IMG/VR virus record: IMGVR_UViG_3300031951_000001
Span: 258,373 to 322,372 of that record
Direction: 5' to 3' (one strand)
Length of the DNA: 64,000 nucleotides
This document shows, piece by piece, positions 24,068-46,816 of the stretch. The position numbers were made by a program, and so were the translations under genes. Positions within the stretch are counted from its first letter, which is position 1. Each line of letters opens with the position of its first letter. The notes beneath the pieces are model-generated. The model had not been told where the DNA came from and did no database searches. It worked only from the letters and a program-made list of their open reading frames with translations.

Positions 24068-27000
24068 ATGCCAACAGCACTAATACAATCGGTAAATTAT
24101 GCGGGACAATATGGGGATATAACATTCAATCCCCAAACCGGCGGCACCGTATCTGTAGGTGTGCAACTTTTACCATTTAATTATGTTGCCGATTATGTAT
24201 ATGGGGTTTACGTAGTTTGTTTTTCAGCCTTTAGTGTTTGCTGTGAATTCAATTTACTTGCACCTACACCGACCCCTACCGCAACAATAACTAAAACGCC
24301 TACCATAACTCCAACTGAAACTGTAACTCCCACAAAAACACCAACTCCGACAATAACCCCCACAATGACCATGACTCCAACCCCATCAACAATATTCTGT
24401 GTTGATTGTGTTGAGTCAGGTTATACGTATGTCTTCAGTTGTGCCCCAACTCCATCTATAACAAGAACGCCAAGTGTTACACCAACAATTACTTATACAC
24501 CTACTCAAACATCAACTAAAACTCCTACTCAAACACCAACGACGACTCAAACACCAACAATTACCAAGACATCAACTCAAACACCAACAATTACCAAGAC
24601 ATCAACCCCAACTAGAACGCTTACTCCAACAGGAACTAATCCTCCATCTGTTCCCGAATGTGCGGTAATATTTAATTCATTACAAAATGTATTTTTCTAT
24701 GATGTTGACACGGACACTACTACACAACTTATAGTTCCTGACACAGTTGGTTCCGCGACAAATGATATTGCCCATACTTCAAGTAAGTTGTGGATGGCTA
24801 GTGCCAGTGAGATATACGAATGGGATATTACTTTGAGTCCGTTTACCGCGGTATTTAATCGTGTAATTACATTACCATCAGGCATAGGTCCTGGGTTGGG
24901 GGCAATTAATAACACAACCTTGATTGCGGTCCAAAGCGGGGGTAATCCAAAACAGGTTGTTTCGGTAAATATTACTACAAATACTGCGGTATTTACAACT
25001 CTATTCCCGATGTTGATAAACAGAGGTGTTGCGGGAGATATTATTTTAACAACAACAAATAAGGTTATTATTACGACTAACGCGACCGCGGCACCATTCG
25101 GACAATTCATAACACAATATAATTTCTTAAATGGTGACCCTGAAGTCGATATTCAATTGAATCCAACCATCACCCAGCCTTGGGGCATTTTTCAAGATAA
25201 TGGTGAAATTTATATCATGGATGGTAACGAAACTAATAATGTATTCCATATTGATAAAAATTATCCGTACACAATTACATTAACAGGTGATACAGGATAT
25301 TCGGTGTATGGGGCTTCTCAATTACCAAATTGTTTAGATGTAAACTTCATACCTCAAATAACACCAACACCAACCCAAACACCAACCCAAACTCCTACAA
25401 CGACCCAAACACCAACAGTAACTGTAACTGAAACAATTACTAATACCCCAACTAATACCCCAACCCCAACTAAGACACCCGTGTCCTGTGACTGTTTTGA
25501 AATAACCGCGGTTGGGAATAATGCGGTTATTGACTATTTTAAATGTGGTAGTGAAGGGGTTTCGGTAAGAAAATTAATAGAACCTGCAAGACCATTTAAA
25601 GTTTGTTTAGAAAATAGTGGAGTTACTACTCTTTCAGGGGTAACTCAAATTAGTAATTTTGGTCCTTGTATTGACGGAGAATGTGCTAGCCCAACCCCAA
25701 CTCCTACAGTCACCCAAACACCAACAAATACATTAACACCTACAATTACCCCAACAAATACATTAACACCTACAATTACCCCAACTGAAACCCAAACTCC
25801 CACAATTACCTCAACTAGTACTCAAACCCCAACTAGTACTCAAACTATAACTCCTACACTTACCCAAAGTCCAACACCAACAGTAACTCTTACTAATACC
25901 GTGACACCAACAATTACTGAAACACCAACAAGTACGGCAACACAAACACCAACAACTACCACAACCCAAACCCCAACAAGTACAGAAACACCAACCACAA
26001 CCCAAACTCCAACAAGTACACAAACACCTACCACAACCCAAACTCCAACCACAACCCAAACTCCAACAAATACAATGACTGTAACTCCGACTCCGGTTTG
26101 TATAGACGGATGTTCAGTTTTATATGTCGATAGTGAATCATTAATTTATTCTTATGACTATAATACAGAAACGTCTACAGTAATTTTTGACCCCAAGGCA
26201 ACAGTAAGAGATATTGCTAACACTAGCTCAAGGTTATTCATTACTATCGTAAATAGAATTCAAAGATACAGTTTTTCAACTTGCCCTGTGAGTGTTACAT
26301 TAATTGATGAAATAACTAGACTTTTCTTGGGTGATGGTTTATTTGCAATAAATGATACCACATTAATTATAACTAGTACACAAGCAATTGGTCAAGAAAA
26401 CGTACAAGAATTAAACTATATAACAAATACAGTAACCCCTAAATTCTCACTACCAACCGGTTATTCGGTAAGAGGTGATTTTATTCTAACAACCGGCGGA
26501 AAATTCATAGTTTCAATGTTCCAAGGATTGAGTAACTATATTTTACAATATGACTATTCAACTGGTGAACAAGAAGTTTTATTCCAAGTTTCTCAAATTA
26601 TTGCCGGATTCTTTGAATTTGGTGGAAATATCTATGCTGTGGATACTTCAGGTATTGTTTATCAAGCAATTTTAGATTCTCCATGGGGGTTAGTTTCTAC
26701 AACTTTAGACCCATTAACTTTTACAGGGGTTATTAAAGGTACATCCCAAGAGTTATCGTGTTTACCTACAAATTTTAACATAGTAACCCCAACCCCAACT
26801 CCTACCCAAACCCCAACTCCTACTGTCACCGTTACCGAAACACCTACTATGACGGTAACTGAAACTCCGACTCAAACGGAAACTCCGACTCAAACCCCAA
26901 CCAATACTGAAACACCTACACAAACTTCTACCCCAACACCAACACCTACTTTAGATTGTTTTTGTTACACATTTGTAAACACCAGTTTATTAGACAAACA

Positions 27001-30000
27001 AAATGTAAGTGGTAAAGATTGTAATAATATAAATTTTGAGTACTCATTACAAATTTCAGGTTCTGAAGGTGACACCGTAAGTTTATGTGCGTCATCAAGT
27101 TTAGTTTTAGACCCATTTATTGCGGTATTCAATAACGGAGTTTGCGAAGGATTTTGTGGCACCTCAACACCAACACCAACACCGACAGAGACTCCCACAC
27201 CAACCATTACTGACACTCCTACACAAACCCCAACAATTACCGAAACAAACACACAAACCCCAACTCAAACTCCAACAAACACTGTTACAGAAACATCCAC
27301 ATCAACACCGACCCCAACTCAAACTGAAACACCGACAAATACTGTAACCTCTACTCCAACAAATACAGTAACCTCTACCCCAACGATAACATCTACATCA
27401 ACTCAAACTCCAACGGTTACATCAACTCCAACTCCATCAATTACCGAGTACAAGCCAGCTATAAGAACATTTAGTGGATGTTGTTTCCCATTTGAAATTT
27501 TTAAACTTTATGAAATACCTGGATTAACCGCTAACACAATAACTGAAGGTACAGTTTACTACATTGAATCCGGTGTATTTAGCGGTTGTGCTACAAACAT
27601 TGCCGAAACATTCACACAAAATAATTATCTATTTGTTAATATTAGTGCCCAAACTAGTTGTAGCGGTTGTTCGGCATCCTACCCATGCCCGAGCTCAACC
27701 CCGACACCTACTGTAACATCAACACCAACAGTTACTCCAACGATTACCTCGACTCCAACGATTACCTCGACCCCAACTCAAACTGAAACCCCAACTCAAA
27801 CTGAAACCCCAACTCAGACACAAACTTCAACAGTAACATCAACACCTACAGAAAGCCCAACTTCGACACAAACTCAAACTCAGACACAAACTCAAACTGT
27901 AACACCAACAAAAACGTCAACCCCAACAAGAACACCTATTGAGTGTGTTTGTTATTCTATAACCAATATAGGTGAATTTTTTGGTAGTTATAACGGAATT
28001 TTATGTAATGGTGGACCTTCAGGAGGAATACCAATAGGTCCTGGTGTAACATTTACCGCATGTTATGCTAAAGGGTCACTTCAAACTGTGGGAGGTACTT
28101 TAACATTTCTTGAGAATGGGTCTTGTGAGAACTCAATACTTTGTCCTACTAGAACTCCGACTCCTACAAGAACTGGTACCCCGACCCCGACTCCTACAAC
28201 TACTGAAACACCTACAAATACCGTAACGCCAACTACGACAACTACTGAAACACCGACTAGTACATCAACACAAACACCAAGTGTAACCAACACTATAACA
28301 TCAACACCTACTCAAACATTGTGTTGTACCTCATGGACACTATATGGAGGTTTAGGTCAATTACTCGATAATGGATTTGTTATTAAACCTCCTTTGAGGG
28401 TAGGGGATGATTTTGCATTGATACCTACAAATGTAGGCTCACCTGGTACTTTAGTTGGTCAAGTTTTGGAACTAATCAGTGTTAGCCCTCCACTATCGCC
28501 CCAATATTTTACAATTTTAACTGCTACGTTTAACCCTATAAATTCGGCCTACTTATTAACATTTACCCCTACTTTAACAATTAATTTGGGTAGTACCTTC
28601 CAGAGTATAATTTATAACATTTATCAGTCAGGAGGTACACAATTCAATGTTTACAATTGTGGAGGGTCTCTTACGACTTTGAATTTGAATAACAATGAAA
28701 TATTGGTCATTCCTTGTTCCTATGATGTTCAGGTTATATCAGGATTCGGGTATGCTGAGTCTGACCCATCATGTGTATGTGTCACTCAAACTCCAACACC
28801 AACATTGACACCTACTGTGACATCAACAATAACTCAAACCCCAACAAATACAGTAACCGTTACTCAATATACTTGTAATTGTTATTTTATAAATGTGCCA
28901 GACATTAGAGATGGAGTAAATTTAGTATTTTTAGATTGTTTGGGTAGTTTGATTTCAATAGCACCAAATAATTTTGGAAATTATTGTGTTAGAGAAATAA
29001 TTGATTATGGTTCAGGTACCGCCGAACTTGTAGGACTATGTATAGATGGAAATTGTCCAACACCAACGCCAACTCCAACTCAAACCGAAACCCCAACCCC
29101 AACTGAAACTCCAACCCAAACAATTACCCAAACTCCAACTGTTACTCAGACCTCGACACCAACTGTTACTCAGACCTCGACACCAACTGTTACTATCACG
29201 GAATCGGCTACACAAACTCAAACACCAACACCGACTGAAACTCCAACTAATACTTTAACACCGACTGTGACAATTACTGAATCTGTTACGCCAACAAGGA
29301 CATTAACACCAACCAAAACTCAGGCACCATGTTTATCTAGCTGTGATGTGTTGTTATTAGACAATGTCGGTAGAGTTTATATATACAATTCAGTCACTAA
29401 CTCTCCACTGTACTTAGGTATTGATGGTCCTGATGGTTCCTTCGATATTGCACATACAAATAACAAAATATGGTTAAATAGAGGAACTTCATTATATGAA
29501 TATGATATAATATTATGTCCGTTCTCGGCGACATTCAGCAGAGAAATTTCAGGTTCAACGGCATTTAGTGCTGGATTATTTGCAATAAATGACACTACTT
29601 TAATTGCTAATAATGGAGCGACCCCTTCTTCAATTTTAGAGATTGATGTTTCGACTAATCCTTACACAGTTACAACAAAATTCTCTTTATTACCAGGAAG
29701 AAGAGTTTCAGGTGATTATGTTCTAACAAATTCAGGTAAGTTAATTGTTAGTAATTTTTCGGGAACAAACCCAAATGCACCCACTGGTGTTTACATAACA
29801 CAATATAACTATATAACTTCGGCAACACCCCCTGTAGATAACAATGTTGATATATTAATATCCCCAACAATTGTATTCCCATATGGGTTATATCAATATG
29901 GAGGTGGTTTCTATATTCTGAGTGCGAATGGTACACAATATACTTTAGACCTAAATCCTCCGTACACACTTACCGCGGCACCTACAGTTCCTTTACCTCC

Positions 30001-33000
30001 AAATACAATCAACGCCGCATATTTTGGTGCATCCCAATCCAACGGATGTTTCGACAATAACATAGTACCTGTGTCACCAACACCAACCTCAACTCCAACC
30101 CCGACCCCTACCCCAACTGCAACAATAACACAAACCCCAACTATAACACAGACTTCAACACCTACACCAACAATAACTTCTACAGTAACACAGACTCCAA
30201 CCCAAACTCAAACACCAACTTCAACAATTACTGTTACACCAACTCAAACAAGTACGGTTACATCAACCCCAACTGTTACATCAACCCCGACACCAACCAT
30301 AACTGAATACAAGCCGGCAATTAGAACGTTTAGTGGATGTTGTTTCCCATTTGAAACCTTTAAGATTTTCGAAATACCTGGATTAACCGCAAATTCAATA
30401 ACTGAAGGCACGGTTTATTACATTGAGTCCGTAGGATTTAGTGGATGTGCGACAAACATTGCAGAGACATTCACTCAAAACAATTACCTATTTGTTAACT
30501 TGAGTGCTCAAACAAGTTGTAGTGGTTGCTCGACAAATTACCCATGTCCAAGCTCAACACCAACACCTACAGTTACATCGACTCCTACATTAACGCCAAC
30601 GCAAACCCAAACACCAACGCAAACCCAAACACCAACTGAGACATCCACTCAAACACCAACTGAGACATCCACTCAAACACCAACCCAAACTCAAACTTCA
30701 ACACAAACACCGACTAATACACAAACATCAACCAACACCCCTACCACAACAGTAACACCAACTTTGACACGTACTCCTGATACTTGTAATTGCTACACAT
30801 TCTTTAACATATCAACTTCACAAAGTTTGACTGTAGATTTTATTGATTGTACAGGCTTACAAAACCAAATTACAATAAATTACGGAAATAGTGCTCAAGT
30901 TTGTGTTAAAAATAATATTTTCTCGGGTACCCCATCAGGGGCTTTAGTATCATTCTTAAATGGTGATTGTACAAATGGATGTCCGACAACTACCATACAA
31001 GCTTGTAACCCATTTGTAGTGAATGGAACAAATAGAATTATTTATACTTATGACCCAATAACTAACACACAAATTCCATTACCTATTAATACCGAATCTG
31101 TTTCTATATACGATATTGCAACAAATGATAACTATTTATGGATATATGGTAATTTCGCAACATTAGGAAATGGTATAAAAGAATATTTTATAACAACATC
31201 CCCATTTACATCAAGTTTAAATAGATTTATATCGGGTTCTACACTATATCAATCCACAAGAAATGGTTTAGCGGTTTTAAATAACACCACATTAATAACG
31301 GCTTCAGGTACGGCTGGTAATGTGATAGTGAGTTTAAATATTTCATCAAATACTTGGGTTGCAACTCCGTTATTTACTTTACCAACAAATAGAGTCCTAA
31401 GGGGTGATTTAACTTATACAAACACAGGTAATATTATTGCGTTAACTTATAATAATGTTGCGGGTACCGGGTCTTTTTTAACACAGTTTGATTTATTTGG
31501 TAATCAGGAATTAGAATTCCAAATAGGTAATTCTGTTGAAGGATTTGGTTTGTTCATGTATAATTCACAAATATTTACGGTTGCCTCTTCATCGGCGTCT
31601 CCCGCTGTAGTTAGAAGAGATTTGAACTTCCCCTATACATCTTTAACAGTAAACAATATGACAATAACAAATGTTGGGTTTGCCCAACCGTTAAGTTGTT
31701 TAAATGTTAATTTCATAGGAGTTACCCGAACACCAACACAAACCCCAACACCTACCCCAACACCTACTACCACTAAAACTAATACGCCTACATCAACGCA
31801 AACCCAAACCCAAACTCCAACTAGAACCTCAACCCCAACAAACACCCAAACTCCTACTATTACAAGTACCTCCACAATTACTCCTACCGTTACAAGAACC
31901 GCCACAATTACTCCTACCGTTACAAGAACATCAACGATTACTCCTACCGTTACAAGAACATCAACAATTACTCCAACAATAACACAAACGGCAACCCAAA
32001 CGAATACCCCAACAGTAACACAAACGGCAACTGTTACACAAACTGCAACTCAAACTCCTACACCTACCGAAACTTCTAATCTGTTTGCTTGTACTTGTTA
32101 TAATTTCTTCAACACATCAAATAACCAACCCGGAACAGTTACTTATTATAATTGTGATGGGGTATTTAGTTCTGTAACGGTTAGTGCCACTTCATATGTT
32201 CAATTATGTGTTTCAGGTAATTCAACAAATCCATTATACACCGCAACGACCCAAATTACTGCTATAGATGAGTTAGGTGATTGTACAGTAAGTTGCCCAA
32301 CAATTAATTTGGATAGTTGTATTTCCTTTTTAGCTGGGGGGCCGGGTAACATCATTCAATCATATGATTTTCAAACTAATACCACAACTTTTTTACCCAT
32401 ACCAAATAGACCATGGTCAATGCTTGGAATTGCAAATACTTCAAATAAACTTTGGGTTCACGGTACTTATCTTGGTTTCACCAGTGGAGGTATAAGAGAA
32501 TGGGATATAACATTTTCACCGTTTAGTGCAACATATAATGGCAGAACTATAAACATACAAAGTAATACTATATTACCTAATAGTAATGCATGTGGTTTAG
32601 TTGCAATCGATAATTTTAATTTATTAAGTGTGTCAGGTGCTACTGCAGGGTCCCAAAGTGTGGTTAATGTTGATATTTCAGATACCATAACCAATAACGC
32701 GGTATTTACGAAACTTTTTGATTTACCAAGTAATAGAAGAATATTAACTGATTTAGTTTTTACTCAAACTGGTAAGATTATAATAATGACCCAAACAACT
32801 ACCCCTGTCAAAATATTTATTACTCAATATGATATACTTGGAAACATTGAGGTTGATGTTCCATTATTCACATCAGGAATAGATGCAAATAGTGGATGGT
32901 CTATTTTGATTAATTCTAATAATTTGTATATTGTAAGAGCTACTACTCCTGGAGAAATTTATCAGGTAAACTTAACTTCACCATATTCGGCAACCTTACT

Positions 33001-35416
33001 TTCTGAAAGTTTACCAGTTACTGTGACGGACCAATCCCAATCACCAGAGTGTATCACAGTTGAGTTTATACCTGTTACAAAAACACCGACTCCAACACCT
33101 ACTAAAACTCCAACACCTACCGTGACTATGACGATAACGCCAACTTCAGGTGCAACAGAAACACGGACTCCGACGCCGACTACCACTCAAACTTCAACAC
33201 CAACAATAACATCTACGATTACTCCGACAATAACGGCAACACCAACAAGAACGGCGACTCAAACACCAACAATAACAAGAACGGCGACTCAAACACCAAC
33301 AATAACAAGAACGGCGACTCAAACACCGACAATAACAAGAACGGCGACTCAAACACCGACAAGAACTGCGACACCAACAAGAACACCAACTAGAACGGCA
33401 ACAAATACTCCATCGATTACCCCAACCATAAGTATAACTCCAACAATAACCTCAAATTTACCATGTAAATGTTTTAATTTTTACAATACAAGTGATACGG
33501 TAAATGGTACTCTTATATACACTGCTTGTAATTTAACAGTTAGTTCTACAACGGTATCGGCTAATTCATTTGTACAATTGTGTGTAAATTTAAGCGGATA
33601 TAGTGGGTCATCACAAATAACATTTGTTAACCAAGTTGGTTCATGTGTAAATGGTTTTTGTCCTAACATATCTATAAATTCTTGTGATTTGTTATCGGTT
33701 AAAAAAGAACCTTCTGGTCCGACTAATGGTCTTTGGCAGATTATGAGTATTAGAAACGAAAGTCTTTTGTATTTGCCGGTTTCTGGTAGAACTGTAGGAA
33801 CCAACGCTTTAGCGAGAACGTCTAATAAAGTTTGGGTACTAGGATTTTTTACGGCATTAGGTGGTTCTAGAATAAGGGAATACTCAATTACCCAAAATCC
33901 TTGGTCTGCGGTGGTGACTAATAACTATACATTACCGACAAATTTGCCGTCTGTTATCGACAATGGTATGGCGGCAATCGATGATGAGAATTTTATTGTT
34001 GGGTCCGGAACTGCATTGAATGTTATTGCAAAATTAAATGTTTCAGGTGGAATTTTATCATCTACTAAAATTATAGATTTAATATCACCATTTACGGTTT
34101 TTGGTGACATGATTTATACTACAACCAATAAAGTCATAGTTGCGGTTAAAAATACAATTAATACTAACATATGGCAAATTCACCAATATGATGTTAATGG
34201 GACTTTTGAACTGGCGGTAGACGTTTCATCTATATCTTTATTTAATTCCGGAATAAATTTCGCGGTAGTTAATAACCAATTATATTTATTACCACATAAT
34301 CAAACATATAATAATTATTATTTAATTAATTTAAATAATCCTTACAATACCACAATTCAGTCGGCTCTTGGAGGTAGTGCCCCAAATGACGTTGCTCAAA
34401 ATCCTGAATGTATTAATATTCAGTTTATCCCTTCTACACAGACACCAACACCAACAAGAACAAAAACTCCGACACCAACAAGAACTCCAACAAGAAGTGC
34501 AACACCAACAAGAACTCCAACAAGAAGTGCAACACCAACAAGAACTCCAACAAGAAGTGCAACACCAACAAGAACTCCAACAAGAAGTGCAACACCAACA
34601 AGAACACCAACAATAACCATGAGTCCGTCGATTACACCAAGTCGAACAGTAACAATGACACCTTCATCTATTGGTATCTATACTCAACCATTGATGGTAA
34701 GTTTTTCTGGAACATCTACTGTAATATCAAGATACGATGTAACAACAAATACTATTACAACTTTAGATGTACAAAGTTCCGGTATTTTACCAAATCAAGA
34801 TATTGCATGTACTCAAAATAAATTTTGGTTATCAAATCAGGGGTCTGGTAACATAATAAAAGAATATACTTATACCGCGTCACCTTTCAATTATGTGTTG
34901 AATAGAACTTTGAATATACCAGTTACATTGACTGATGGATTAACTGTAAGGACTGTGGGAGGTATTGAATATTTGATTGGATGTACAGGTAATACAACTA
35001 TTGTTGAAATGGATATATCATCAACAACGGCCATAGTTACCGATAAATTTGATTTACCTCTTAACAGAACCATAGGTGCTGATATGATGTATACTAATAC
35101 TGGAAAATTAATAGTTGCCAACTATTCAGGTGGTAATACAACAGTCGGATTTATGACGCAGTATAACTATGAAACAAATACTTTAGAGATTGATAGGGCA
35201 TTACCAACTACTTATGCTGCTGGCGGTCAAAAAGTTTATTTTGTATCTAATAATAATATCTATAGTACTAGTATCTCTGCTAGTCTTTCGGTTGTTTATC
35301 AATGGAATACAGATAGTAATATTAACAATCCACTTCCATTACAATCCTTCGAGTTACCACTACTTCGTGGAAGCGCTCAACCACAAGAATTCATAAACAT
35401 TAATTTCACCTCATAA
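24068..35416 (+). CDS. Giant modular fibre/adhesin-like protein: Thr-Pro linkers, seven ~230 aa beta-rich modules and small Cys-rich modules
   Basis: 3782 aa uninterrupted ORF; recurring 'DIA.T..KLW...I.E(W/Y).IT..PF.A...R.I' and 'GD...T..GK.I' modules. Confidence 0.8.
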   Translation: MPTALIQSVNYAGQYGDITFNPQTGGTVSVGVQLLPFNYVADYVYGVYVVCFSAFSVCCEFNLLAPTPTPTATITKTPTITPTETVTPTKTPTPTITPTMTMTPTPSTIFCVDCVESGYTYVFSCAPTPSITRTPSVTPTITYTPTQTSTKTPTQTPTTTQTPTITKTSTQTPTITKTSTPTRTLTPTGTNPPSVPECAVIFNSLQNVFFYDVDTDTTTQLIVPDTVGSATNDIAHTSSKLWMASASEIYEWDITLSPFTAVFNRVITLPSGIGPGLGAINNTTLIAVQSGGNPKQVVSVNITTNTAVFTTLFPMLINRGVAGDIILTTTNKVIITTNATAAPFGQFITQYNFLNGDPEVDIQLNPTITQPWGIFQDNGEIYIMDGNETNNVFHIDKNYPYTITLTGDTGYSVYGASQLPNCLDVNFIPQITPTPTQTPTQTPTTTQTPTVTVTETITNTPTNTPTPTKTPVSCDCFEITAVGNNAVIDYFKCGSEGVSVRKLIEPARPFKVCLENSGVTTLSGVTQISNFGPCIDGECASPTPTPTVTQTPTNTLTPTITPTNTLTPTITPTETQTPTITSTSTQTPTSTQTITPTLTQSPTPTVTLTNTVTPTITETPTSTATQTPTTTTTQTPTSTETPTTTQTPTSTQTPTTTQTPTTTQTPTNTMTVTPTPVCIDGCSVLYVDSESLIYSYDYNTETSTVIFDPKATVRDIANTSSRLFITIVNRIQRYSFSTCPVSVTLIDEITRLFLGDGLFAINDTTLIITSTQAIGQENVQELNYITNTVTPKFSLPTGYSVRGDFILTTGGKFIVSMFQGLSNYILQYDYSTGEQEVLFQVSQIIAGFFEFGGNIYAVDTSGIVYQAILDSPWGLVSTTLDPLTFTGVIKGTSQELSCLPTNFNIVTPTPTPTQTPTPTVTVTETPTMTVTETPTQTETPTQTPTNTETPTQTSTPTPTPTLDCFCYTFVNTSLLDKQNVSGKDCNNINFEYSLQISGSEGDTVSLCASSSLVLDPFIAVFNNGVCEGFCGTSTPTPTPTETPTPTITDTPTQTPTITETNTQTPTQTPTNTVTETSTSTPTPTQTETPTNTVTSTPTNTVTSTPTITSTSTQTPTVTSTPTPSITEYKPAIRTFSGCCFPFEIFKLYEIPGLTANTITEGTVYYIESGVFSGCATNIAETFTQNNYLFVNISAQTSCSGCSASYPCPSSTPTPTVTSTPTVTPTITSTPTITSTPTQTETPTQTETPTQTQTSTVTSTPTESPTSTQTQTQTQTQTVTPTKTSTPTRTPIECVCYSITNIGEFFGSYNGILCNGGPSGGIPIGPGVTFTACYAKGSLQTVGGTLTFLENGSCENSILCPTRTPTPTRTGTPTPTPTTTETPTNTVTPTTTTTETPTSTSTQTPSVTNTITSTPTQTLCCTSWTLYGGLGQLLDNGFVIKPPLRVGDDFALIPTNVGSPGTLVGQVLELISVSPPLSPQYFTILTATFNPINSAYLLTFTPTLTINLGSTFQSIIYNIYQSGGTQFNVYNCGGSLTTLNLNNNEILVIPCSYDVQVISGFGYAESDPSCVCVTQTPTPTLTPTVTSTITQTPTNTVTVTQYTCNCYFINVPDIRDGVNLVFLDCLGSLISIAPNNFGNYCVREIIDYGSGTAELVGLCIDGNCPTPTPTPTQTETPTPTETPTQTITQTPTVTQTSTPTVTQTSTPTVTITESATQTQTPTPTETPTNTLTPTVTITESVTPTRTLTPTKTQAPCLSSCDVLLLDNVGRVYIYNSVTNSPLYLGIDGPDGSFDIAHTNNKIWLNRGTSLYEYDIILCPFSATFSREISGSTAFSAGLFAINDTTLIANNGATPSSILEIDVSTNPYTVTTKFSLLPGRRVSGDYVLTNSGKLIVSNFSGTNPNAPTGVYITQYNYITSATPPVDNNVDILISPTIVFPYGLYQYGGGFYILSANGTQYTLDLNPPYTLTAAPTVPLPPNTINAAYFGASQSNGCFDNNIVPVSPTPTSTPTPTPTPTATITQTPTITQTSTPTPTITSTVTQTPTQTQTPTSTITVTPTQTSTVTSTPTVTSTPTPTITEYKPAIRTFSGCCFPFETFKIFEIPGLTANSITEGTVYYIESVGFSGCATNIAETFTQNNYLFVNLSAQTSCSGCSTNYPCPSSTPTPTVTSTPTLTPTQTQTPTQTQTPTETSTQTPTETSTQTPTQTQTSTQTPTNTQTSTNTPTTTVTPTLTRTPDTCNCYTFFNISTSQSLTVDFIDCTGLQNQITINYGNSAQVCVKNNIFSGTPSGALVSFLNGDCTNGCPTTTIQACNPFVVNGTNRIIYTYDPITNTQIPLPINTESVSIYDIATNDNYLWIYGNFATLGNGIKEYFITTSPFTSSLNRFISGSTLYQSTRNGLAVLNNTTLITASGTAGNVIVSLNISSNTWVATPLFTLPTNRVLRGDLTYTNTGNIIALTYNNVAGTGSFLTQFDLFGNQELEFQIGNSVEGFGLFMYNSQIFTVASSSASPAVVRRDLNFPYTSLTVNNMTITNVGFAQPLSCLNVNFIGVTRTPTQTPTPTPTPTTTKTNTPTSTQTQTQTPTRTSTPTNTQTPTITSTSTITPTVTRTATITPTVTRTSTITPTVTRTSTITPTITQTATQTNTPTVTQTATVTQTATQTPTPTETSNLFACTCYNFFNTSNNQPGTVTYYNCDGVFSSVTVSATSYVQLCVSGNSTNPLYTATTQITAIDELGDCTVSCPTINLDSCISFLAGGPGNIIQSYDFQTNTTTFLPIPNRPWSMLGIANTSNKLWVHGTYLGFTSGGIREWDITFSPFSATYNGRTINIQSNTILPNSNACGLVAIDNFNLLSVSGATAGSQSVVNVDISDTITNNAVFTKLFDLPSNRRILTDLVFTQTGKIIIMTQTTTPVKIFITQYDILGNIEVDVPLFTSGIDANSGWSILINSNNLYIVRATTPGEIYQVNLTSPYSATLLSESLPVTVTDQSQSPECITVEFIPVTKTPTPTPTKTPTPTVTMTITPTSGATETRTPTPTTTQTSTPTITSTITPTITATPTRTATQTPTITRTATQTPTITRTATQTPTITRTATQTPTRTATPTRTPTRTATNTPSITPTISITPTITSNLPCKCFNFYNTSDTVNGTLIYTACNLTVSSTTVSANSFVQLCVNLSGYSGSSQITFVNQVGSCVNGFCPNISINSCDLLSVKKEPSGPTNGLWQIMSIRNESLLYLPVSGRTVGTNALARTSNKVWVLGFFTALGGSRIREYSITQNPWSAVVTNNYTLPTNLPSVIDNGMAAIDDENFIVGSGTALNVIAKLNVSGGILSSTKIIDLISPFTVFGDMIYTTTNKVIVAVKNTINTNIWQIHQYDVNGTFELAVDVSSISLFNSGINFAVVNNQLYLLPHNQTYNNYYLINLNNPYNTTIQSALGGSAPNDVAQNPECINIQFIPSTQTPTPTRTKTPTPTRTPTRSATPTRTPTRSATPTRTPTRSATPTRTPTRSATPTRTPTITMSPSITPSRTVTMTPSSIGIYTQPLMVSFSGTSTVISRYDVTTNTITTLDVQSSGILPNQDIACTQNKFWLSNQGSGNIIKEYTYTASPFNYVLNRTLNIPVTLTDGLTVRTVGGIEYLIGCTGNTTIVEMDISSTTAIVTDKFDLPLNRTIGADMMYTNTGKLIVANYSGGNTTVGFMTQYNYETNTLEIDRALPTTYAAGGQKVYFVSNNNIYSTSISASLSVVYQWNTDSNINNPLPLQSFELPLLRGSAQPQEFININFTS
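33245..33366 (+). repeat. Near-perfect 30 bp tandem repeat (~4 copies) encoding TRTATQTPTI
   Basis: Unit acaagaacggcgactcaaacacc(a/g)acaata. Confidence 0.85.
34472..34605 (+). repeat. Perfect 30 bp tandem repeat (4 copies plus a partial) encoding TPTRTPTRSA
   Basis: Unit acaccaacaagaactccaacaagaagtgca. Confidence 0.9.
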
Positions 35417-42431: not shown

Positions 42432-42929
42432 ATGAACTACTTATTAATTGTATTCGGAAAAAATATGAACGAAGTGTCGGCAATCGATATTTGCGAAAAA
42501 ATTACAGGAGAAGAAAAAATTCATGAGGTACAATACCATGTAACCGATGACTCCATAACAATACTGTTCAAGAGTATTCTGGCCCAAAAGAAACTACATC
42601 AAATTTTCTCACCAATTTTTGGAGAAAAGAACACAATCTATGTTCTATTAGAAAATGTCAGCGACATAAACTCCGCTAACATGGCTAAAGGAATTTACCA
42701 AATGTTCTTCAATAATGAAGAGGTGAATGAAAATGAAGAAGTGATAGAATTTGAAGAGGAGGAAGAATTTGATATCGATGTTAGTAAATTAAGAGACTTA
42801 TTGAATAAGAAAGTTGAAGAAAAAGAATTAACTTTGGACGAAATCTTGGATAAGATTAATACCCAAGGGATATATTCACTAACAGATAAAGAAAAAAAAC
42901 AATTAGATAATTACGCAAACAATATATGA
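42432..42929 (+). CDS. Hypothetical protein with C-terminal DUF6576-like motif
   Basis: 'LDEILDKINTQGIYSLTDKEKKQL'; ATG 42432 lies downstream of the promoter. Confidence 0.6.
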   Translation: MNYLLIVFGKNMNEVSAIDICEKITGEEKIHEVQYHVTDDSITILFKSILAQKKLHQIFSPIFGEKNTIYVLLENVSDINSANMAKGIYQMFFNNEEVNENEEVIEFEEEEEFDIDVSKLRDLLNKKVEEKELTLDEILDKINTQGIYSLTDKEKKQLDNYANNI

Positions 42930-43726
42930 AAGACAAAAACACAGGTATTCCTATTAACCAAGAAGAAATTCAATATTACCTCAAAGACATTCGCAAAATA
43001 AAGGTAATGTCTCCCGAACGTGAGCGTGAGCTCGCCTCAAGAATGTTGTCTGAAAACATTACAGATAAGGAACGTAAAGAAATTGAAAAAGAATTGTTGA
43101 TTGGTAACTTACGTTTTGTAATTACCGTGGCCAAACAATATCAGAATCAAGGATTAGATTTCCCTGACCTCATTGCCGAAGGTAACTTGGGTCTTATGAA
43201 AGCTATCCATAACTTTGATTGGAGTAAAAATCTTCGTTTCATATCATACGCAGTGTGGTGGGTTAAACAATCAATCCTTCAATCTCTTAACGACAATGCT
43301 CGTACAATCCGACTACCAGTAAATGTTGTACAGGACCTACAACGAGCAAAGAAAGAGGTTGAGTCAAAGGGTGGTAAGTTGGATGAGAAGTTTGAGATGT
43401 TACCTTCGATTATTGACCTTGATATGAATATCAATGAGGAAGGTGATACACTTGTCGATATTATTAAAAATGAAGACGCTGACATGCCTGACGCGGTATT
43501 CAACAACAAAGATGTACTGAAGTCGGAGTTAATCAATCTTCTAAACGTTTTGGACGAACGTGAAAAAGTAATCGTACTTGACTACTTTGGTCTAACTGGT
43601 ACTCCACGAACATTGGAAGATATCGGAACAGATTTTGGTCTTACCAAAGAACGTGTAAGACAAATCAAAGAGAAAGCGTTGAGGAAATTACGAAACGAAA
43701 GTTCAGTACTTTTCGACTACATGTAA
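42926..43726 (+). CDS. RNA polymerase sigma-70 factor (RpoD/RpoS-like, lacking region 1.1)
   Basis: 'NLRFVITVAKQY', 'DLIAEGNLGLMKA', 'RFISYAVWW', 'RTIRLP', 'TLEDIG...LTKERVRQIKEKALRKLR'. Confidence 0.92.
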   Translation: MKDKNTGIPINQEEIQYYLKDIRKIKVMSPERERELASRMLSENITDKERKEIEKELLIGNLRFVITVAKQYQNQGLDFPDLIAEGNLGLMKAIHNFDWSKNLRFISYAVWWVKQSILQSLNDNARTIRLPVNVVQDLQRAKKEVESKGGKLDEKFEMLPSIIDLDMNINEEGDTLVDIIKNEDADMPDAVFNNKDVLKSELINLLNVLDEREKVIVLDYFGLTGTPRTLEDIGTDFGLTKERVRQIKEKALRKLRNESSVLFDYM

Positions 43727-43736
43727 AAAATAAAAG

Positions 43737-43768
43737 ACCTTCTATTTATTATAATAGAAGGTTTTTTA
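43737..43768 (+). terminator. Rho-independent terminator after the sigma gene; overlaps a TATTTAT motif
   Basis: ACCTTCTATT-tattat-AATAGAAGGT followed by a T run. Confidence 0.75.
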
Positions 43769-43787
43769 CTTTTATAATAAAACTATC

Positions 43788-44084
43788 ATGAAAAAAGTAT
43801 TAGAATTTTTAGACGCATGGGGTGTTAGAATTTCAAGTATTCTCATCCTTATTATCTTTTTCAAAACCTGTAGTACTAACACACGTATAGAAAAGGTTAA
43901 AGATGTATCCTTAAAAAATAATGAGAGAATTGACTCTTTGGCTATCGAATTGAGAAAAGAAATCAAAATCGAAGGTTTGGAGGCGGAGAGAAGAATGATT
44001 CAATCAACCGATAGAGAGTTGATGGATGTTACAAGACAAGAAAGGATTGGTAATATCATCGACAGTTTAAAAACTCGTAAATGA
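43788..44084 (+). CDS. Small membrane-anchored coiled-coil protein
   Basis: 98 aa; N-terminal hydrophobic helix followed by 'FKTCS' (possible lipoprotein Cys). Confidence 0.6.
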   Translation: MKKVLEFLDAWGVRISSILILIIFFKTCSTNTRIEKVKDVSLKNNERIDSLAIELRKEIKIEGLEAERRMIQSTDRELMDVTRQERIGNIIDSLKTRK

Positions 44085-44929
44085 GAAAAATATTTAACTG
44101 GGTTGTAGAACACCCCAACAGAACTATGTTCTTGATACCAATTATATTGGTAGCTATTATCTCAATATCCCACGTCGTTTCTTGGTATGACATAGCCAAT
44201 CCATTTAATTGGGCCATCTACTTATCAATTGCAATTGAGATTGGTGCAATGACGGCTCTTGTTGCTGCAACCAACAAAATTAAAGGAGGGGTTTGGTTTA
44301 TGTTTGGGTTGATTACCTTCATTCAAATGATTGGTAATATCTACTTCTCGTTTAAAGAAATTGAGGTTAATGGGGAATTATTCAGGTCTTGGGTTGAATT
44401 AACATCACCTGTATGGGAAGCTCTTGGCTCTGATATGTCTGATATGACATCGGCAAGAAGATGGTTGGCGTTTCTTGAAGGAGGTTTGTTACCTATTATA
44501 TCATTGACATCGCTTCACTTCTTTACAAAATACGATGTTGGGAAAAAAGAAAACAAAATTGGAATTGAAAAGATTGTTGTTGAAAAAACGGTAGAAGTAC
44601 CGGTTGAAAAGATTGTCGAGGTGGAGAAAATTGTTGAAGTACCTGTTGATAAGATTGTGGAAGTTGAAAAGATAGTTGAGGTAGAAAGAATAGTCGAGGT
44701 ACCCGTTGAAAAGATAGTTGAAGTACCAGTTAGAGACGAGCAATCATACGCACAACTATTATCAAGGATTGCTGAATTAGAAAAAATGCAACCTCCTGTT
44801 GTTGAGAAAATAGTTGAAGTCCCCGTCGAAAAAATAGTTGAGGTGGAGAAGATAGTCGAAGTACCGGTCTATATTGAAAAAGGTAACGATGATGATGAAA
44901 ACTCAAGAAGATTGACCTACTCAAAGTAA
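44081..44929 (+). CDS. Multi-pass membrane protein with EKIVEVP (alveolin/articulin-like) repeats
   Basis: About four TM segments, then repeated VEKIVEVP(V) units. Confidence 0.75.
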   Translation: MRKIFNWVVEHPNRTMFLIPIILVAIISISHVVSWYDIANPFNWAIYLSIAIEIGAMTALVAATNKIKGGVWFMFGLITFIQMIGNIYFSFKEIEVNGELFRSWVELTSPVWEALGSDMSDMTSARRWLAFLEGGLLPIISLTSLHFFTKYDVGKKENKIGIEKIVVEKTVEVPVEKIVEVEKIVEVPVDKIVEVEKIVEVERIVEVPVEKIVEVPVRDEQSYAQLLSRIAELEKMQPPVVEKIVEVPVEKIVEVEKIVEVPVYIEKGNDDDENSRRLTYSK

Positions 44930-44937
44930 AATGACCT

Positions 44938-45540
44938 ATGTTCGAATTAATAAAATACGGAGAGTTTGAAGTAGGGGACCACAACAACAAAATTCAGATA
45001 ATATTACTTAATACTTTAAGAGACAAAGAAACGTTTTTGAACTCCGCGAAGTATAGATTTAACGGGAAAAATCAAAAAATACCTAACTACTTAATCACTA
45101 GGGAAGGTAAGATTATTCAACTATTAGAAAACACTGAAAGTCCTAAATTCTTTTTGGATAAAAAAATAAATCAGAATTCTATTATAGTCTGTTTAGAAAA
45201 TTTAGGTTGGTTACAAAAAGAACCTTTAAACGAGAATTACATTAACTGGATTGGAGATATTTATAAAGGTAATGTGTTCGAAAAAAAGTGGAGGGATTAT
45301 TTCTTTTGGGAACCTTATAGTGAAATACAAATCGAAGCGACAGCTTTTATATGTAAAAAATTGTTCGAAGAAATATCCATAAAGAAGCAAGTGGTAGGAC
45401 ACAATACCAAAATTAATGGAGCCGAGAGAACAGAGGGAGTTTTATGTAGAAGTAATTTCAGTCAAGATTTTACTGACGTAAATCCTTCTTTCGATTTTGA
45501 ACTTTTTTTAAAATATATAGAAGATGAACAATTCACATGA
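44938..45540 (+). CDS. Amidase_2 (N-acetylmuramoyl-L-alanine amidase)-fold protein, probably catalytically degenerate
   Basis: 'NYLITREGKIIQL', 'NQNSIIVCLE', 'YSEIQIEA', 'VVGH', 'DVNPSFDF'; no His in the first Zn-ligand strand. Confidence 0.65.
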   Translation: MFELIKYGEFEVGDHNNKIQIILLNTLRDKETFLNSAKYRFNGKNQKIPNYLITREGKIIQLLENTESPKFFLDKKINQNSIIVCLENLGWLQKEPLNENYINWIGDIYKGNVFEKKWRDYFFWEPYSEIQIEATAFICKKLFEEISIKKQVVGHNTKINGAERTEGVLCRSNFSQDFTDVNPSFDFELFLKYIEDEQFT

Positions 45541-46141
45541 TGAAATTAAAAAATTACTTCGAGCATCTCGTGAGATGTTGTCTAGTACTGAAGTAATTGA
45601 CGAAACAAATAGAATTAAAAACCAATACGGTATTCTAACTGAACAAGGAGTTAGCTTGGTTGGGGGCGGTAATGTCACTAAAAAACTTAATGTTGCTAAA
45701 TCTGTTGAAGATGAAATTGAGGATGACGAACAAGAAATGGACCCATCCAAAGAGGATAAGAAACAGGCTTACAGAATATCAGGAGGTATTTTAGTATTAC
45801 ACGGAAAGGACAAGACAGATTTAGAATTGACTACCGACGAGAAAATCGCGTTCCAAGAAACTATGGACGAATTCGTGTCAGAAGTTTCCGATTTAGTAGA
45901 TTTCAACAAATTAAATGTATATACAAACAATGTTGAATGGTCAGGTAAAATTATTGATTTTGATATAGAATTTTTCTACTCGATAGGTGAAGAAAATGGA
46001 ATCTATCTAAATGGAGAAATGATTAAAACTGACGAGAAATTTTTGGATTTGATAACAAAACTAAAAACTTATTATGAAAAATTCAAATCTAAATGGGCTA
46101 AAATTTTGGCTTCTCGTAAAAAAACAAAACCTGAAGAATGA
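45524..46141 (+). CDS. Hypothetical protein
   Basis: 205 aa ORF in the operon. Confidence 0.65.
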   Translation: MNNSHDEIKKLLRASREMLSSTEVIDETNRIKNQYGILTEQGVSLVGGGNVTKKLNVAKSVEDEIEDDEQEMDPSKEDKKQAYRISGGILVLHGKDKTDLELTTDEKIAFQETMDEFVSEVSDLVDFNKLNVYTNNVEWSGKIIDFDIEFFYSIGEENGIYLNGEMIKTDEKFLDLITKLKTYYEKFKSKWAKILASRKKTKPEE

Positions 46142-46497
46142 TGAACTTGAAAGATATTATAAGTAATTTACTAATCATCGCAGTTGGTGCTTTGGTTGTG
46201 TATTCATTAATGCTTACTACAGATTTAAGTGTTGATGTTAAATCTTACTATGACAGAGTTGATGGGTTACAGACCAAAATTGATTCTGCTATGGCGGTCA
46301 ATCAAAGAATTGACAATAAAATTGCTAAACTCGACTCGGCTATTTTGGTTATTAATAACGAAATACACCTTGTTGATGAAAACATAAACATAATTAAAAC
46401 TAGAACAAATGCCAAAGTTTCTGCTGTTGATAATTTTAACTATTCTGAACTTCAAAAGTTTTTCTCAAAAAGATACAACCCAAATAACCCTAAGTAA
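46138..46497 (+). CDS. N-terminally anchored coiled-coil protein (i-spanin-like)
   Basis: TM helix followed by heptad repeats; overlaps the next gene by 89 nt. Confidence 0.5.
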   Translation: MMNLKDIISNLLIIAVGALVVYSLMLTTDLSVDVKSYYDRVDGLQTKIDSAMAVNQRIDNKIAKLDSAILVINNEIHLVDENINIIKTRTNAKVSAVDNFNYSELQKFFSKRYNPNNPK

Positions 46498-46816
46498 CCA
46501 AACTGCCAAGTTAGTTATAAAGGATATTTTAGCCGGTGACGGGTGTAAAGAAGAGCTCGAGCAAACTTACCTAAAGATTGCTAAAATGGAGGAAAGAGAT
46601 ATCCAAAAGGATAGTGTTATTTATTTCCTTAAAGAAAAGGATTTAAATAATCAAAACATTATAGGTTATAAAGATGGTCAAATAGGACAATTAAGAGAAT
46701 TGTCTAAAAATTTAGAAGACGCAATAGAAGACCAAAATGATAAAATAAAATGGTGGAGACGAGGAGCTATTGCTGGAGGAGTTACCACATTACTATTATT
46801 AATAATTGCTTTTTAA
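46409..46816 (+). CDS. Signal-peptide, coiled-coil, C-terminal TM protein (possible spanin partner)
   Basis: 'MPKFLLLIILTILNFKSFS|Q' signal; C-term 'WWRRGAIAGGVTTLLLLIIAF'. Confidence 0.5.
   Translation: MPKFLLLIILTILNFKSFSQKDTTQITLSNQTAKLVIKDILAGDGCKEELEQTYLKIAKMEERDIQKDSVIYFLKEKDLNNQNIIGYKDGQIGQLRELSKNLEDAIEDQNDKIKWWRRGAIAGGVTTLLLLIIAF

What the first reader, a model, noticed from the sequence alone, without database searches (positions are those of the whole stretch)
44081..44929. Phage membrane protein with alveolin/articulin-like EKIVEVP repeats
Seen: after about four TM helices, 44560-44880 encodes roughly ten EKIVEV(P) units (VEKIVEVEKIVEVPVDKIVEVEKIVEVERIVEVPVEKIVEVPV). Established: EKIVEVP/VPV repeats typify alveolins (IMC proteins) and articulins, which form membrane skeletons in protists. 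Inference: a polymerising membrane-attached lattice in the infected cell, acting as a holin-like raft, an envelope stabiliser or a virion assembly platform. Convergent low-complexity origin is possible.
Basis: partly seen in the sequence, partly recalled or inferred. Interest (0 to 1): 0.65.

Follow-up and report, generated by a model that had tools for sequence, protein, structure and literature searches.

The report
Phage membrane protein with repeat tail
A giant-phage inner-membrane protein really does carry about eleven EKIVEV(P) repeats, but they are one lineage's version of a fast-changing acidic tail in a conserved envelope/lysis gene cluster and resemble protist alveolins by convergence, not descent.

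Summary
ORF 44081-44929 (+, 282 aa) has four transmembrane helices followed by 11 EKIVEV / EKIVEVPV units, and it passes Pfam's IMCp cut-off (27.4 vs 21.1 bits).

The alveolin reading is not supported:
- The conserved part is the N-terminal 4-TM domain: 742 clusters at 50% identity, at least 509 IMG/VR contigs, no Pfam, PHROG or PDB match.
- The C-terminal tail is hypervariable, 60-370 aa, acidic and low-complexity.
- EKIVEV arrays occur in only one clade (16 of 27 rows, 0 of 55 outside). Copy number is 0-11, and sister phages with about 80% identical TM domains have unrelated tails.
- The same arrays sit in unrelated prokaryotic proteins (ZapA-like, GYF_2, chemoreceptor, Wza-like), many of them also flagged IMCp.
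- The period is 6/8 aa, not the alveolin 12 aa.

The gene lies in a conserved envelope cluster of a 322-kb jumbo phage: a small Cys-bearing anchored protein, this 4-TM protein, an Amidase_2-like protein (adjacent in 79 of 79 loci), p205, and an overlapping spanin-like pair.

My best reading is a holin-like membrane gate or anchor. Its cytoplasmic tail would be an extended acidic spacer ending in a conserved basic RLxYxK tip. That function is inferred and has not been shown.

The parts
44081..44929 (+). Whole gene, 282 aa: 4-TM domain plus repeat tail
   Evidence: start conserved in homologues
44081..44545 (+). N-terminal 4-TM domain (aa 1-155), the conserved core of the family. Invariant polar residues lie in the helices: S28, H31, S49, E53, T79, Q82, N86
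44567..44731 (+). Repeat block 1 (aa 163-217): eight EKIVEV / EKIVEVPV-type units
44732..44803 (+). Interruption (aa 218-241) with a predicted helix at 220-236, followed by PP
   Evidence: pLDDT ~60-67
44804..44869 (+). Repeat block 2 (aa 242-263): three units
44906..44926 (+). Conserved basic C-terminal tip RRLTYSK (family motif [KR]RL[ST]Y.K)
   Evidence: 45 of 59 distinct near relatives
43731..43768 (+). Terminator-like hairpin (16-bp stem, T run) between the sigma gene and the cluster. A TAnnTTTA box follows at 43768-43775
43788..44084 (+). p98: small protein with an N-terminal hydrophobic segment, an invariant Cys28 (K-T-C-S-T-N) and a helical rest. Its stop overlaps the start of the 4-TM gene (ATGA)
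44938..45540 (+). Amidase_2-like protein, 200 aa, no signal peptide. It is adjacent to the 4-TM gene in 79 of 79 related loci
45524..46141 (+). p205: conserved soluble protein of unknown function, always present in the cluster
46138..46497 (+). p119: N-terminal TM helix plus coiled coil (i-spanin-like architecture)
46409..46816 (+). p135: signal peptide ending ..SFS|Q plus a C-terminal TM helix. It overlaps p119 by 89 nt
42926..43726 (+). RpoD-like sigma factor, the conserved upstream neighbour

Best explanation
The gene encodes the multi-pass inner-membrane member of a conserved envelope/lysis cluster of an uncultured 322-kb jumbo phage. The cluster is p98, the 4-TM protein, an Amidase_2-like protein, p205, and the overlapping spanin-like pair p119/p135. 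The 4-TM bundle is the conserved working part. It most likely acts as a holin-like gate or anchor that controls the neighbouring wall-directed protein, which has no signal peptide. The C-terminus is cytoplasmic (N-in/C-in by the positive-inside rule). It is a long acidic, extended or disordered spacer that ends in a conserved basic tip, RLxYxK. In this lineage the spacer was built by tandem duplication of EKIVEV / EKIVEVPV units, and selection now maintains it at the peptide level. It may tune reach, timing or self-association, but it is replaceable. The resemblance to alveolins is convergent. Shown: the anatomy, the family, the synteny, and the clade-restricted, labile repeat. Inferred: the topology, the holin-like role and the spacer-plus-tip mechanism.
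For: - Family size: more than 2292 word-search hits, 742 clusters at 50% identity with the domain always N-terminal, and at least 509 IMG/VR contigs.
- N-domain median identity to the window is 79.5%, like sigma at 80.5%. The amidase-like protein is 59% and p98 is 53%.
- Tails are hypervariable. All 16 repeat-bearing tails fall in one clade of 27 rows (SH-aLRT 98) and none among the 55 other rows.
- Synteny: the Amidase_2-like gene lies within 2 kb downstream in 79 of 79 loci, p205 in 79 of 79, and sigma upstream in 70 of 78. The order is kept in distant members on 371-kb and 248-kb contigs.
- Five of six consecutive genes between 43788 and 46816 encode membrane, exported or wall-related proteins.
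- In L095 a non-homologous 4-TM protein (hhalign probability 0.2%) carries the same EKIVEV tail and an RVLSYKK end. It occupies the same slot before the amidase-like gene. Holins typically show this positional conservation with membrane-domain replacement.
- The C-terminal tip is conserved in 45 of 59 distinct near relatives.
- The amidase-like family keeps H25 in 51 of 65, H155 in 60 of 65, and an acidic residue at 163 in 56 of 65.
Against: - There is no match to any holin family in Pfam, PHROGs or NCBIfam.
- At 282-530 aa, with an acidic tail of 60-370 aa, the proteins are atypical for holins.
- The TM domain is as conserved as the sigma factor and has an invariant buried polar set (S28, H31, S49, E53, T79, Q82, N86). 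That looks more like a transporter or enzyme site than a typical holin.
- The window's amidase-like copy has Asn, not His, at the first putative Zn ligand, and no homologue has the T7-type Cys, so its activity is unproven.
- A separate SLT transglycosylase with a signal-anchor lies at 14283-14849(-) and could be the real endolysin.
- The 462-kb phage homologue is not next to an amidase.
- There are no expression or timing data.
Confidence: 0.5

Rival explanations
1. Alveolin-like lattice: the EKIVEVP array pairs between molecules into beta-ribbons and builds a membrane-attached protein layer or raft in the infected cell.
For: Pfam IMCp passes its cut-off. The repeat peptide is kept by selection: 132 synonymous against 36 non-synonymous codon differences between units. 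The units are rich in V and I and punctuated by Pro, which favours beta structure. True alveolin domains are also disordered as AlphaFold monomers and form a beta-ribbon only with a partner (PMC12465100), so pLDDT ~30 does not exclude this. The tail type is retained when the TM domain is swapped (L095).
Against: The repeat is absent from 55 of 55 rows outside one clade and from 11 of 27 rows inside it. Copy number is 0-11 among phages with ~80% identical TM domains. The period is 6/8 aa, not 12 aa. The same arrays act as inter-domain segments in ZapA-like, GYF_2, chemoreceptor and Wza-like proteins. This points to a generic linker rather than a dedicated skeleton.
Confidence: 0.1
2. Membrane tether or regulator: the 4-TM domain anchors an acidic tail that sequesters a cytoplasmic partner at the membrane. 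The partner could be the neighbouring sigma factor, DNA or another phage protein, as with a membrane-bound anti-sigma factor or a membrane-tethered DNA binder.
For: The gene follows an RpoD-like sigma gene in 70 of 78 loci. Of 132 family representatives, 22 carry an R-V-R-L-S-x-E-D-L-type motif in the tail, and it hits Pfam TacA1 at 22-25 bits against a cut-off of 21 (also Atlas row 4). The fold has weak likeness to actinophage DUF2637 membrane proteins that carry HTH or excisionase-like ends (TM 0.5-0.6). The conserved C-terminal tip looks like a docking peptide.
Against: A strong terminator-like hairpin separates the sigma gene from this cluster. The window's tail lacks the TacA1-like motif. 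There is no sequence match to DUF2637. The neighbours on the other side are envelope proteins.
Confidence: 0.15
3. Superinfection exclusion or envelope remodelling module, working like T4 Imm/Sp: the membrane protein, together with the small exported p98 and a wall-binding amidase-fold protein, blocks entry of other phages or reshapes the wall during the long jumbo-phage cycle.
For: The cluster is made of envelope proteins. The amidase-like copy in the window lacks one canonical Zn ligand, as non-catalytic wall binders do. p98 has the size and layout of small periplasmic phage proteins.
Against: Exclusion genes are usually accessory and fast-evolving. This TM domain, by contrast, is a core gene as conserved as sigma across at least 509 viral contigs. 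PADLOC gives no match.
Confidence: 0.1
4. Meaningless low-complexity expansion in a non-functional or mis-called ORF.
For: The tail is compositionally biased and AlphaFold confidence is low.
Against: The ORF, its start and its C-terminal tip are conserved in thousands of homologues. Synonymous differences dominate between units.
Confidence: 0.02

Closest known systems
Alveolins / IMCp domain (PF12314) of Alveolata
   Same: The consensus heptad EKIVEVP is identical. The composition is rich in V, E, K, I and P. The Pfam model passes its cut-off. The domain is low-confidence as an AlphaFold monomer. The protein is associated with a membrane.
   Different: The period is 6/8 aa (14/20 aa super-periods), not 12 aa. 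The protein is an integral 4-TM protein, not a soluble, often palmitoylated cortical protein. It comes from a phage. The repeat is a clade-specific, dispensable variant of a hypervariable tail. There is no similarity outside the repeat. The same arrays occur in unrelated bacterial proteins.
Holins with a charged cytoplasmic C-terminal regulatory domain (e.g. lambda S; 4-TM holin families; T4 T with antiholin RI); from my own knowledge
   Same: It is a membrane protein encoded directly before a wall-hydrolase-fold gene that lacks a signal peptide. It has a charged hydrophilic C-terminus. Its genomic slot is kept while the membrane domain is swapped (L095). A small anchored partner (p98, 98 aa) recalls RI (97 aa).
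   Different: It belongs to no known holin family. It is much longer. The tail is acidic and 60-370 aa rather than short and basic. The TM domain is strongly conserved with a buried polar cluster. Function is untested.
Anchor-spacer-tip proteins: TonB (Glu-Pro/Lys-Pro rod), ZipA, the FtsZ linker plus C-terminal peptide, titin PEVK; from my own knowledge
   Same: There is a membrane anchor or globular head, then a charged Pro-containing low-complexity spacer of variable length, then a short conserved terminal element. The P/E/V/K-type composition is also shared.
   Different: There is no sequence relation. The partner of the tip is unknown. The spacer here is cytoplasmic and rich in beta-branched residues.
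DUF2637 (PF10935) membrane proteins of actinophages
   Same: Both have a four-helix membrane domain followed by a variable cytoplasmic end, sometimes a DNA-binding one. There is weak Foldseek likeness (TM 0.5-0.6).
   Different: There is no HMM match in 65 members or in the genome. The hosts and phage groups differ.

Membership tests
Alveolin / IMCp (PF12314) | Match to the Pfam IMCp model above its gathering score | tested here: met
   27.4 bits against 21.1. However, only about 10 of 120 close homologues carry the precomputed hit. The model also flags ZapA-like and GYF_2 bacterial proteins, so it detects the repeat, not descent.
Alveolin / IMCp (PF12314) | EKIVEVP heptad embedded in 12-residue repeats, about 13 per domain (PMC12465100) | tested here: not met
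   Units are 6 or 8 aa. TRF periods are 18, 24, 42 and 60 nt. There are 11 units in two blocks.
Alveolin / IMCp (PF12314) | Repeat domain is the conserved, defining part of the protein family | tested here: not met
   The TM domain is the conserved part. The repeat is confined to one clade, varies from 0 to 11 copies, and is replaced by unrelated tails.
Alveolin / IMCp (PF12314) | Alveolate origin and a place in the sub-alveolar network | tested here: not met
   The source is a 322-kb virus record with phage genes.
Alveolin / IMCp (PF12314) | Assembly into filaments or beta-ribbons with partners | not testable with these tools
   The monomer model has low confidence, as it does for true alveolins. 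No oligomer model was run.
Articulins | VPVPV-type 12-residue repeats | tested here: not met
   Only single PV dipeptides occur between units. No VPVPV is present.
Holins (functional class) | Membrane protein encoded next to an endolysin gene | tested here: met
   An Amidase_2-like gene lies directly downstream in 79 of 79 loci. Caveat: its catalytic competence is unproven.
Holins (functional class) | Hydrophilic, charged C-terminal cytoplasmic domain | tested here: met
   Tail net charge is -11 with a basic tip. Topology is inferred from charge distribution. The length and acidity are atypical.
Holins (functional class) | Membership of a described holin family | tested here: not met
   No hit in Pfam, PHROGs or NCBIfam. 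There are only scattered sub-threshold holin hits, in 1-2 of 65 members.
Holins (functional class) | Timed hole formation that releases the endolysin | not testable with these tools
   This needs expression and lysis assays.
DUF2637 (PF10935) | HMM match | tested here: not met
   0 of 65 members and no match in the genome. The structural likeness is weak.
Amidase_2 (neighbour gene 44938-45540) | Zn-binding triad of T7 lysozyme/AmpD type | tested here: inconclusive
   Pfam scores 34.9 bits. In 65 homologues, position 25 is H 51 / N 13 / D 1 (the window has N). Position 155 is H in 60. Position 163 is E or D in 56. The T7 Cys position is S, N or T and never C.

The most novel reading that the evidence does not exclude
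EKIVEV(P) arrays in phage and bacterial proteins may fold with each other into alveolin-type beta-ribbons. In that case this jumbo-phage protein, anchored by four helices, would lay down a protein sheet or raft on the cytoplasmic face of the host membrane. Alveolin-style membrane skeletons would then be a convergent principle shared by protists, bacteria (ZapA-like, GYF_2 proteins) and phages. Separately, the 4-TM domain would be the founding member of a new holin or gate family typical of a large group of aquatic jumbo phages.
Probability: 0.1. Interest if true: 0.75.

Novelty: new variant of a known kind. Interest (0 to 1): 0.4.

Why it matters
The result matters in three ways.

1. It corrects an attractive but misleading annotation. 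An above-threshold Pfam IMCp hit in a phage or bacterium reports a convergent repeat, not an alveolin.
2. It defines a large, unannotated family of jumbo-phage inner-membrane proteins. The family has a confidently modelled 4-helix domain with no known fold relative, and it sits in a fixed envelope cluster. It is a candidate for the still unknown holin or lysis control of these uncultured phages.
3. It shows that EKIVEV-type arrays are reusable spacer modules across many prokaryotic protein families. Their physical behaviour (disordered spring, rigid rod or beta-ribbon) can therefore be tested on small bacterial and phage proteins.

Tried and rejected
- PHROGs, NCBIfam and PADLOC gave no match for the protein, p98, the amidase-like protein or p205.
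- Pfam on 65 N-domains gave only scattered sub-threshold hits.
- PDB by sequence gave nothing.
- Foldseek against PDB found nothing at E<=0.001. VIA-align wide found only generic four-helix bundles, Z<=8.8.
- The Atlas fold search returned only unannotated viral clusters. The Atlas feature search with the tail gave no usable hit.
- tblastn against 50,697 phage records found only one uncultured 462-kb phage, N-domain at 32-34% identity. Megablast of 10 kb found nothing.
- Complex prediction on the N-domain plus p98 returned no answer. I do not use it as evidence either way.
- The idea that DUF6576 upstream is a rhomboid-type protease in a proteolytic sigma/anti-sigma circuit is rejected. p171 is soluble, and the Pfam match covers only a 47-aa C-terminal motif.
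- The idea that ClpP links to the basic C-terminal tip is not supported for this genome: there is no ClpP in G000.
- The first impression that the amidase-like protein is a dead enzyme was softened after 65 homologues were aligned.
- Papers: no report of EKIVEVP or alveolin-like repeats in phages, and no paper that cites PF12314.
- No other genetic code was used.

Full report
OBSERVATION. The window holds an ORF at 44081-44929 (+) of 282 aa. Its ATG overlaps the stop of the preceding 98-aa ORF (ATGA).

Hydropathy and an AlphaFold2 model of residues 1-160, built on 65 diverse homologues (pLDDT 89.9, pTM 0.81), give four membrane helices: 12-36, 42-64, 71-93 and 122-~150. There are also amphipathic helices at 2-10 and 99-115. 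Basic residues cluster at the N-terminus, in the loop after helix 2 and after helix 4. The two other loops are acidic. By the positive-inside rule (my inference) both ends are cytoplasmic.

Residues 163-217 and 242-263 hold 11 units of EKIVEV or EKIVEVPV. Tandem Repeats Finder reports periods of 18, 24, 42 and 60 nt. A loose hexamer pattern has 15 matches in all six frames of the 322-kb genome, 9 of them in this gene. Between units, 132 of 270 codon pairs differ synonymously and only 36 non-synonymously. The peptide is therefore old and maintained by selection. Pfam IMCp scores 27.4 bits against a cut-off of 21.1.

THE GENOME. The window is bases 258373-322372 of a 322,372-bp IMG/VR virus record with 34% G+C, estimated complete. 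Its last 98 bases repeat bases 13-110. The window encodes SbcCD-like nucleases, an RpoD-like sigma factor, a Hoc-like domain protein and ORFs of 1481 and 3782 aa. No cultured phage holds a relative of the protein. Only an uncultured 462-kb phage does, at 32-34% identity over the membrane domain.

THE FAMILY.
- The word search gave more than 2292 hits, all metagenomic, on contigs up to 154 kb.
- A profile of the N-domain, searched against 1.84 billion representatives, found 742 clusters at E<=1e-3 and 158 at E<=1e-30. The domain is always at the N-terminus.
- An IMG/VR scan found at least 509 viral contigs.
- Across 65 diverse members these residues are invariant: P20, I21, S28, H31, N40, P41, W44, L48, S49, E53, F75, T79, Q82, G85, N86, W104 and G134. 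This places a polar stripe on each of helices 1-3.
- The domain has no Pfam, PHROG, NCBIfam or PADLOC match and no solved relative by sequence.
- There is no convincing fold match in the PDB. Atlas matches are unannotated viral clusters only. In BFVD there is only weak likeness to actinophage DUF2637-type proteins, which the HMMs do not confirm.

THE TAIL.
- Behind the domain, tails run 60-370 aa. They are acidic, low-complexity and different from cluster to cluster.
- In a tree of 82 N-domains (quick IQ-TREE search), all 16 tails with three or more EKIVEV-type hexamers lie in one clade of 27 rows (SH-aLRT 98), and none among the 55 other rows. Inside the clade they are mixed with repeat-free tails.
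- Among 59 distinct proteins from the 80 nearest IMG/VR loci (N-domain 71-100% identical), 31 have no such hexamer and 17 have three or more. The highest count is 9, in the window's own allele. Other lineages expand EVIKEV or EKEVIV instead.
- The most stable feature of the tail is a basic C-terminal tip, [KR]RL[ST]Y.K, in 45 of 59. Others end in ..NIKRID..EKKK or ..RRRFR.
- Of 132 representatives, 22 carry an R-V-R-L-S-x-E-D-L helix motif that reaches Pfam TacA1 at 22-25 bits against a cut-off of 21. The window's tail has only a short helix at 220-236.
- A search with the tail alone found 372 proteins. Of the 104 newly listed, 103 lack the 4-TM domain.
- EKIVEVP arrays therefore also sit between domains of ZapA-like proteins, GYF_2 proteins, a PAS-chemoreceptor, a Wza-like exporter, membrane-anchored coiled-coil proteins and other jumbo-phage proteins. 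Many of these carry the precomputed IMCp label.
- I conclude that the array is a portable, convergently recurring spacer.

CONTEXT.
- In the 80 nearest loci, an Amidase_2-like gene follows within 2 kb in 79 of 79, p205 in 79 of 79, and the sigma gene precedes in 70 of 78.
- The order is kept in distant members, including a 371-kb contig of 45% G+C and a 248-kb contig.
- A 16-bp-stem terminator-like hairpin at 43731-43768 separates the sigma gene from the cluster.
- p98 has a hydrophobic N-terminal segment followed by an invariant Cys and a helical rest.
- p119 has an N-terminal membrane helix plus coiled coil. p135 overlaps it by 89 nt and has a signal peptide ending ..SFS|Q plus a C-terminal membrane helix.
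- Five of six consecutive genes thus encode envelope proteins. The layout (small anchored protein, multi-pass protein, wall-hydrolase fold without signal peptide, overlapping pair of anchored coiled-coil proteins) is that of a lysis cassette.
- In contig L095 of a related phage, the same slot before the amidase-like gene holds a 447-aa protein. Its four-helix membrane domain is not detectably related (hhalign probability 0.2%), but its tail is again an EKIVEV array ending RVLSYKK. That phage lacks p98, and its protein has a ~130-aa coiled-coil loop.
- Positional conservation with replacement of the membrane domain is typical of holins (my knowledge). It also shows that tail and tip matter.
- Caveats on the amidase-like protein: Pfam scores it at 34.9 bits and hhalign against T7 lysozyme gives 38.7% probability. 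In 65 homologues the putative Zn ligands are H25 (51; Asn in 13, including the window), H155 (60) and E/D163 (56). The T7 Cys position is never Cys. Activity is plausible for the family but unproven for this copy.
- A separate 188-aa SLT transglycosylase with a signal-anchor lies at 14283-14849(-). No Phage_lysozyme or M15_4 was found.

MECHANISM. I commit to the following at about 0.5 confidence. The protein is a holin-like inner-membrane gate or anchor of the phage's envelope/lysis cluster. Its cytoplasmic tail is an extended acidic spacer that presents a basic docking tip. In this lineage the spacer is built from EKIVEV units. What argues against this:
- The domain is as conserved as the sigma factor (79.5 against 80.5% median identity).
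- It carries a buried polar cluster.
- The tail is far longer and more acidic than known holin tails.
- No holin family matches.

The rivals are an alveolin-like self-assembling layer (0.1), a membrane tether or regulator of sigma or DNA (0.15), and an exclusion or wall-remodelling module (0.1). I estimate the non-homology to alveolins at 0.85 or higher.

COMPARISON. The protein shares the consensus heptad, the composition and a Pfam hit with alveolins. It fails the 12-residue period, conservation of the repeat, taxon and architecture (PMC12465100). In working principle it is closer to anchor-spacer-tip proteins such as TonB, ZipA or the FtsZ linker, and to PEVK-type segments (my knowledge).

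HOST HINTS (unresolved).
- p135 homologues have signal peptides cleaved before Gln, as in Bacteroidota (the rule itself is my knowledge).
- TAnnTTT[GA] boxes lie in 10 of 33 upstream regions against 6.6% of random windows. There are no Shine-Dalgarno motifs.
- Related contigs were binned with Chitinophagaceae, Emticicia and Flavobacteriaceae, but also with an alphaproteobacterial MAG and a Prochlorococcus single-cell genome.

LIMITS. The complex prediction gave no answer. The tree is from the quick search, not the careful one.

Noticed in passing
window 46138-46816 (+): There are two overlapping genes (89-nt overlap). p119 has an N-terminal TM helix plus coiled coil. p135 has a signal peptide plus a C-terminal TM helix. 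This is a spanin-like pair. In p135 homologues the residue before ..FSQ alternates between Cys and Ser.
   Followed up: partly
window 14283-14849 (-): A 188-aa SLT lytic transglycosylase (39-40 bits) with an N-terminal signal-anchor lies among DNA-metabolism genes on the minus strand. It is a second candidate wall hydrolase of the phage.
   Followed up: partly
window 43788-44084 (+): p98 family (167 hits) has an invariant Cys straight after the hydrophobic segment (K-T-C-S-T-N). JGI auto-names some members as the LpoB lipoprotein. The lipobox is atypical, so lipidation is uncertain.
   Followed up: partly
window, upstream of many ORFs (e.g. 11274, 35455, 48055, 53878, 55292, 43788): A recurrent TATATTTATA / TAnnTTT[GA] box lies 10-25 nt before start codons, in 10 of 33 upstream regions against 6.6% background. 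No Shine-Dalgarno motifs are seen. It resembles the Bacteroidota -7 promoter element.
   Followed up: partly
L010 (Prochlorococcus sp. AG-409-L21 single-cell genome, 83.8-kb contig): A contig of a single-cell genome labelled Prochlorococcus carries the same sigma/p98/4-TM/amidase-like cluster, with the N-domain 75% identical. This could mean an infected cell or a co-sorted phage. It conflicts with the Bacteroidota hints.
   Followed up: no
P0393, P0396, P0395, P0421, P0394 (proteins): Bacterial ZapA-like, GYF_2, PAS-chemoreceptor and Wza-like proteins carry long EKIVEVP-type arrays between their domains. Many are labelled IMCp by precomputed Pfam.
   Followed up: partly
L095 1977-3320 (+): A related phage has, in the same slot, a 447-aa protein with an unrelated tetraspanin-like 4-TM domain and a ~130-aa coiled-coil loop. 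It has the same EKIVEV tail and RVLSYKK end, and the phage lacks p98. The loop may replace p98.
   Followed up: partly
P0116, P0402, P0406; L096 3001-3912: The same C-terminal coiled coil, ending ..LLRGSNLNRR[IV], follows EKIVEV arrays both in one 4-TM family member and in soluble 298-303 aa jumbo-phage proteins. The latter are encoded next to a metallophosphatase. This suggests tail modules are shuffled through the repeats.
   Followed up: no
window 24068-35416 (+) and 19609-24054 (+): There are two very large ORFs, 3782 aa and 1481 aa. The second matches phrog_15511 of unknown function. The neighbouring ORFs at 11274-13679 and 17272-19545 are rich in Cys and in Pro/Thr linkers.
   Followed up: no
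G000 bases 1-110 and 322275-322372 (outside and at the end of the window): The last 98 bases of the record repeat bases 13-110, although IMG/VR classes the record as linear. This indicates a circular assembly or a short terminal repeat.
   Followed up: yes
G000 178447-180192 (+), outside the window: There are two adjacent ~290-aa proteins made largely of Gly-rich GGxG runs, both ending in ..GG.G.V.I..W.
   Followed up: no
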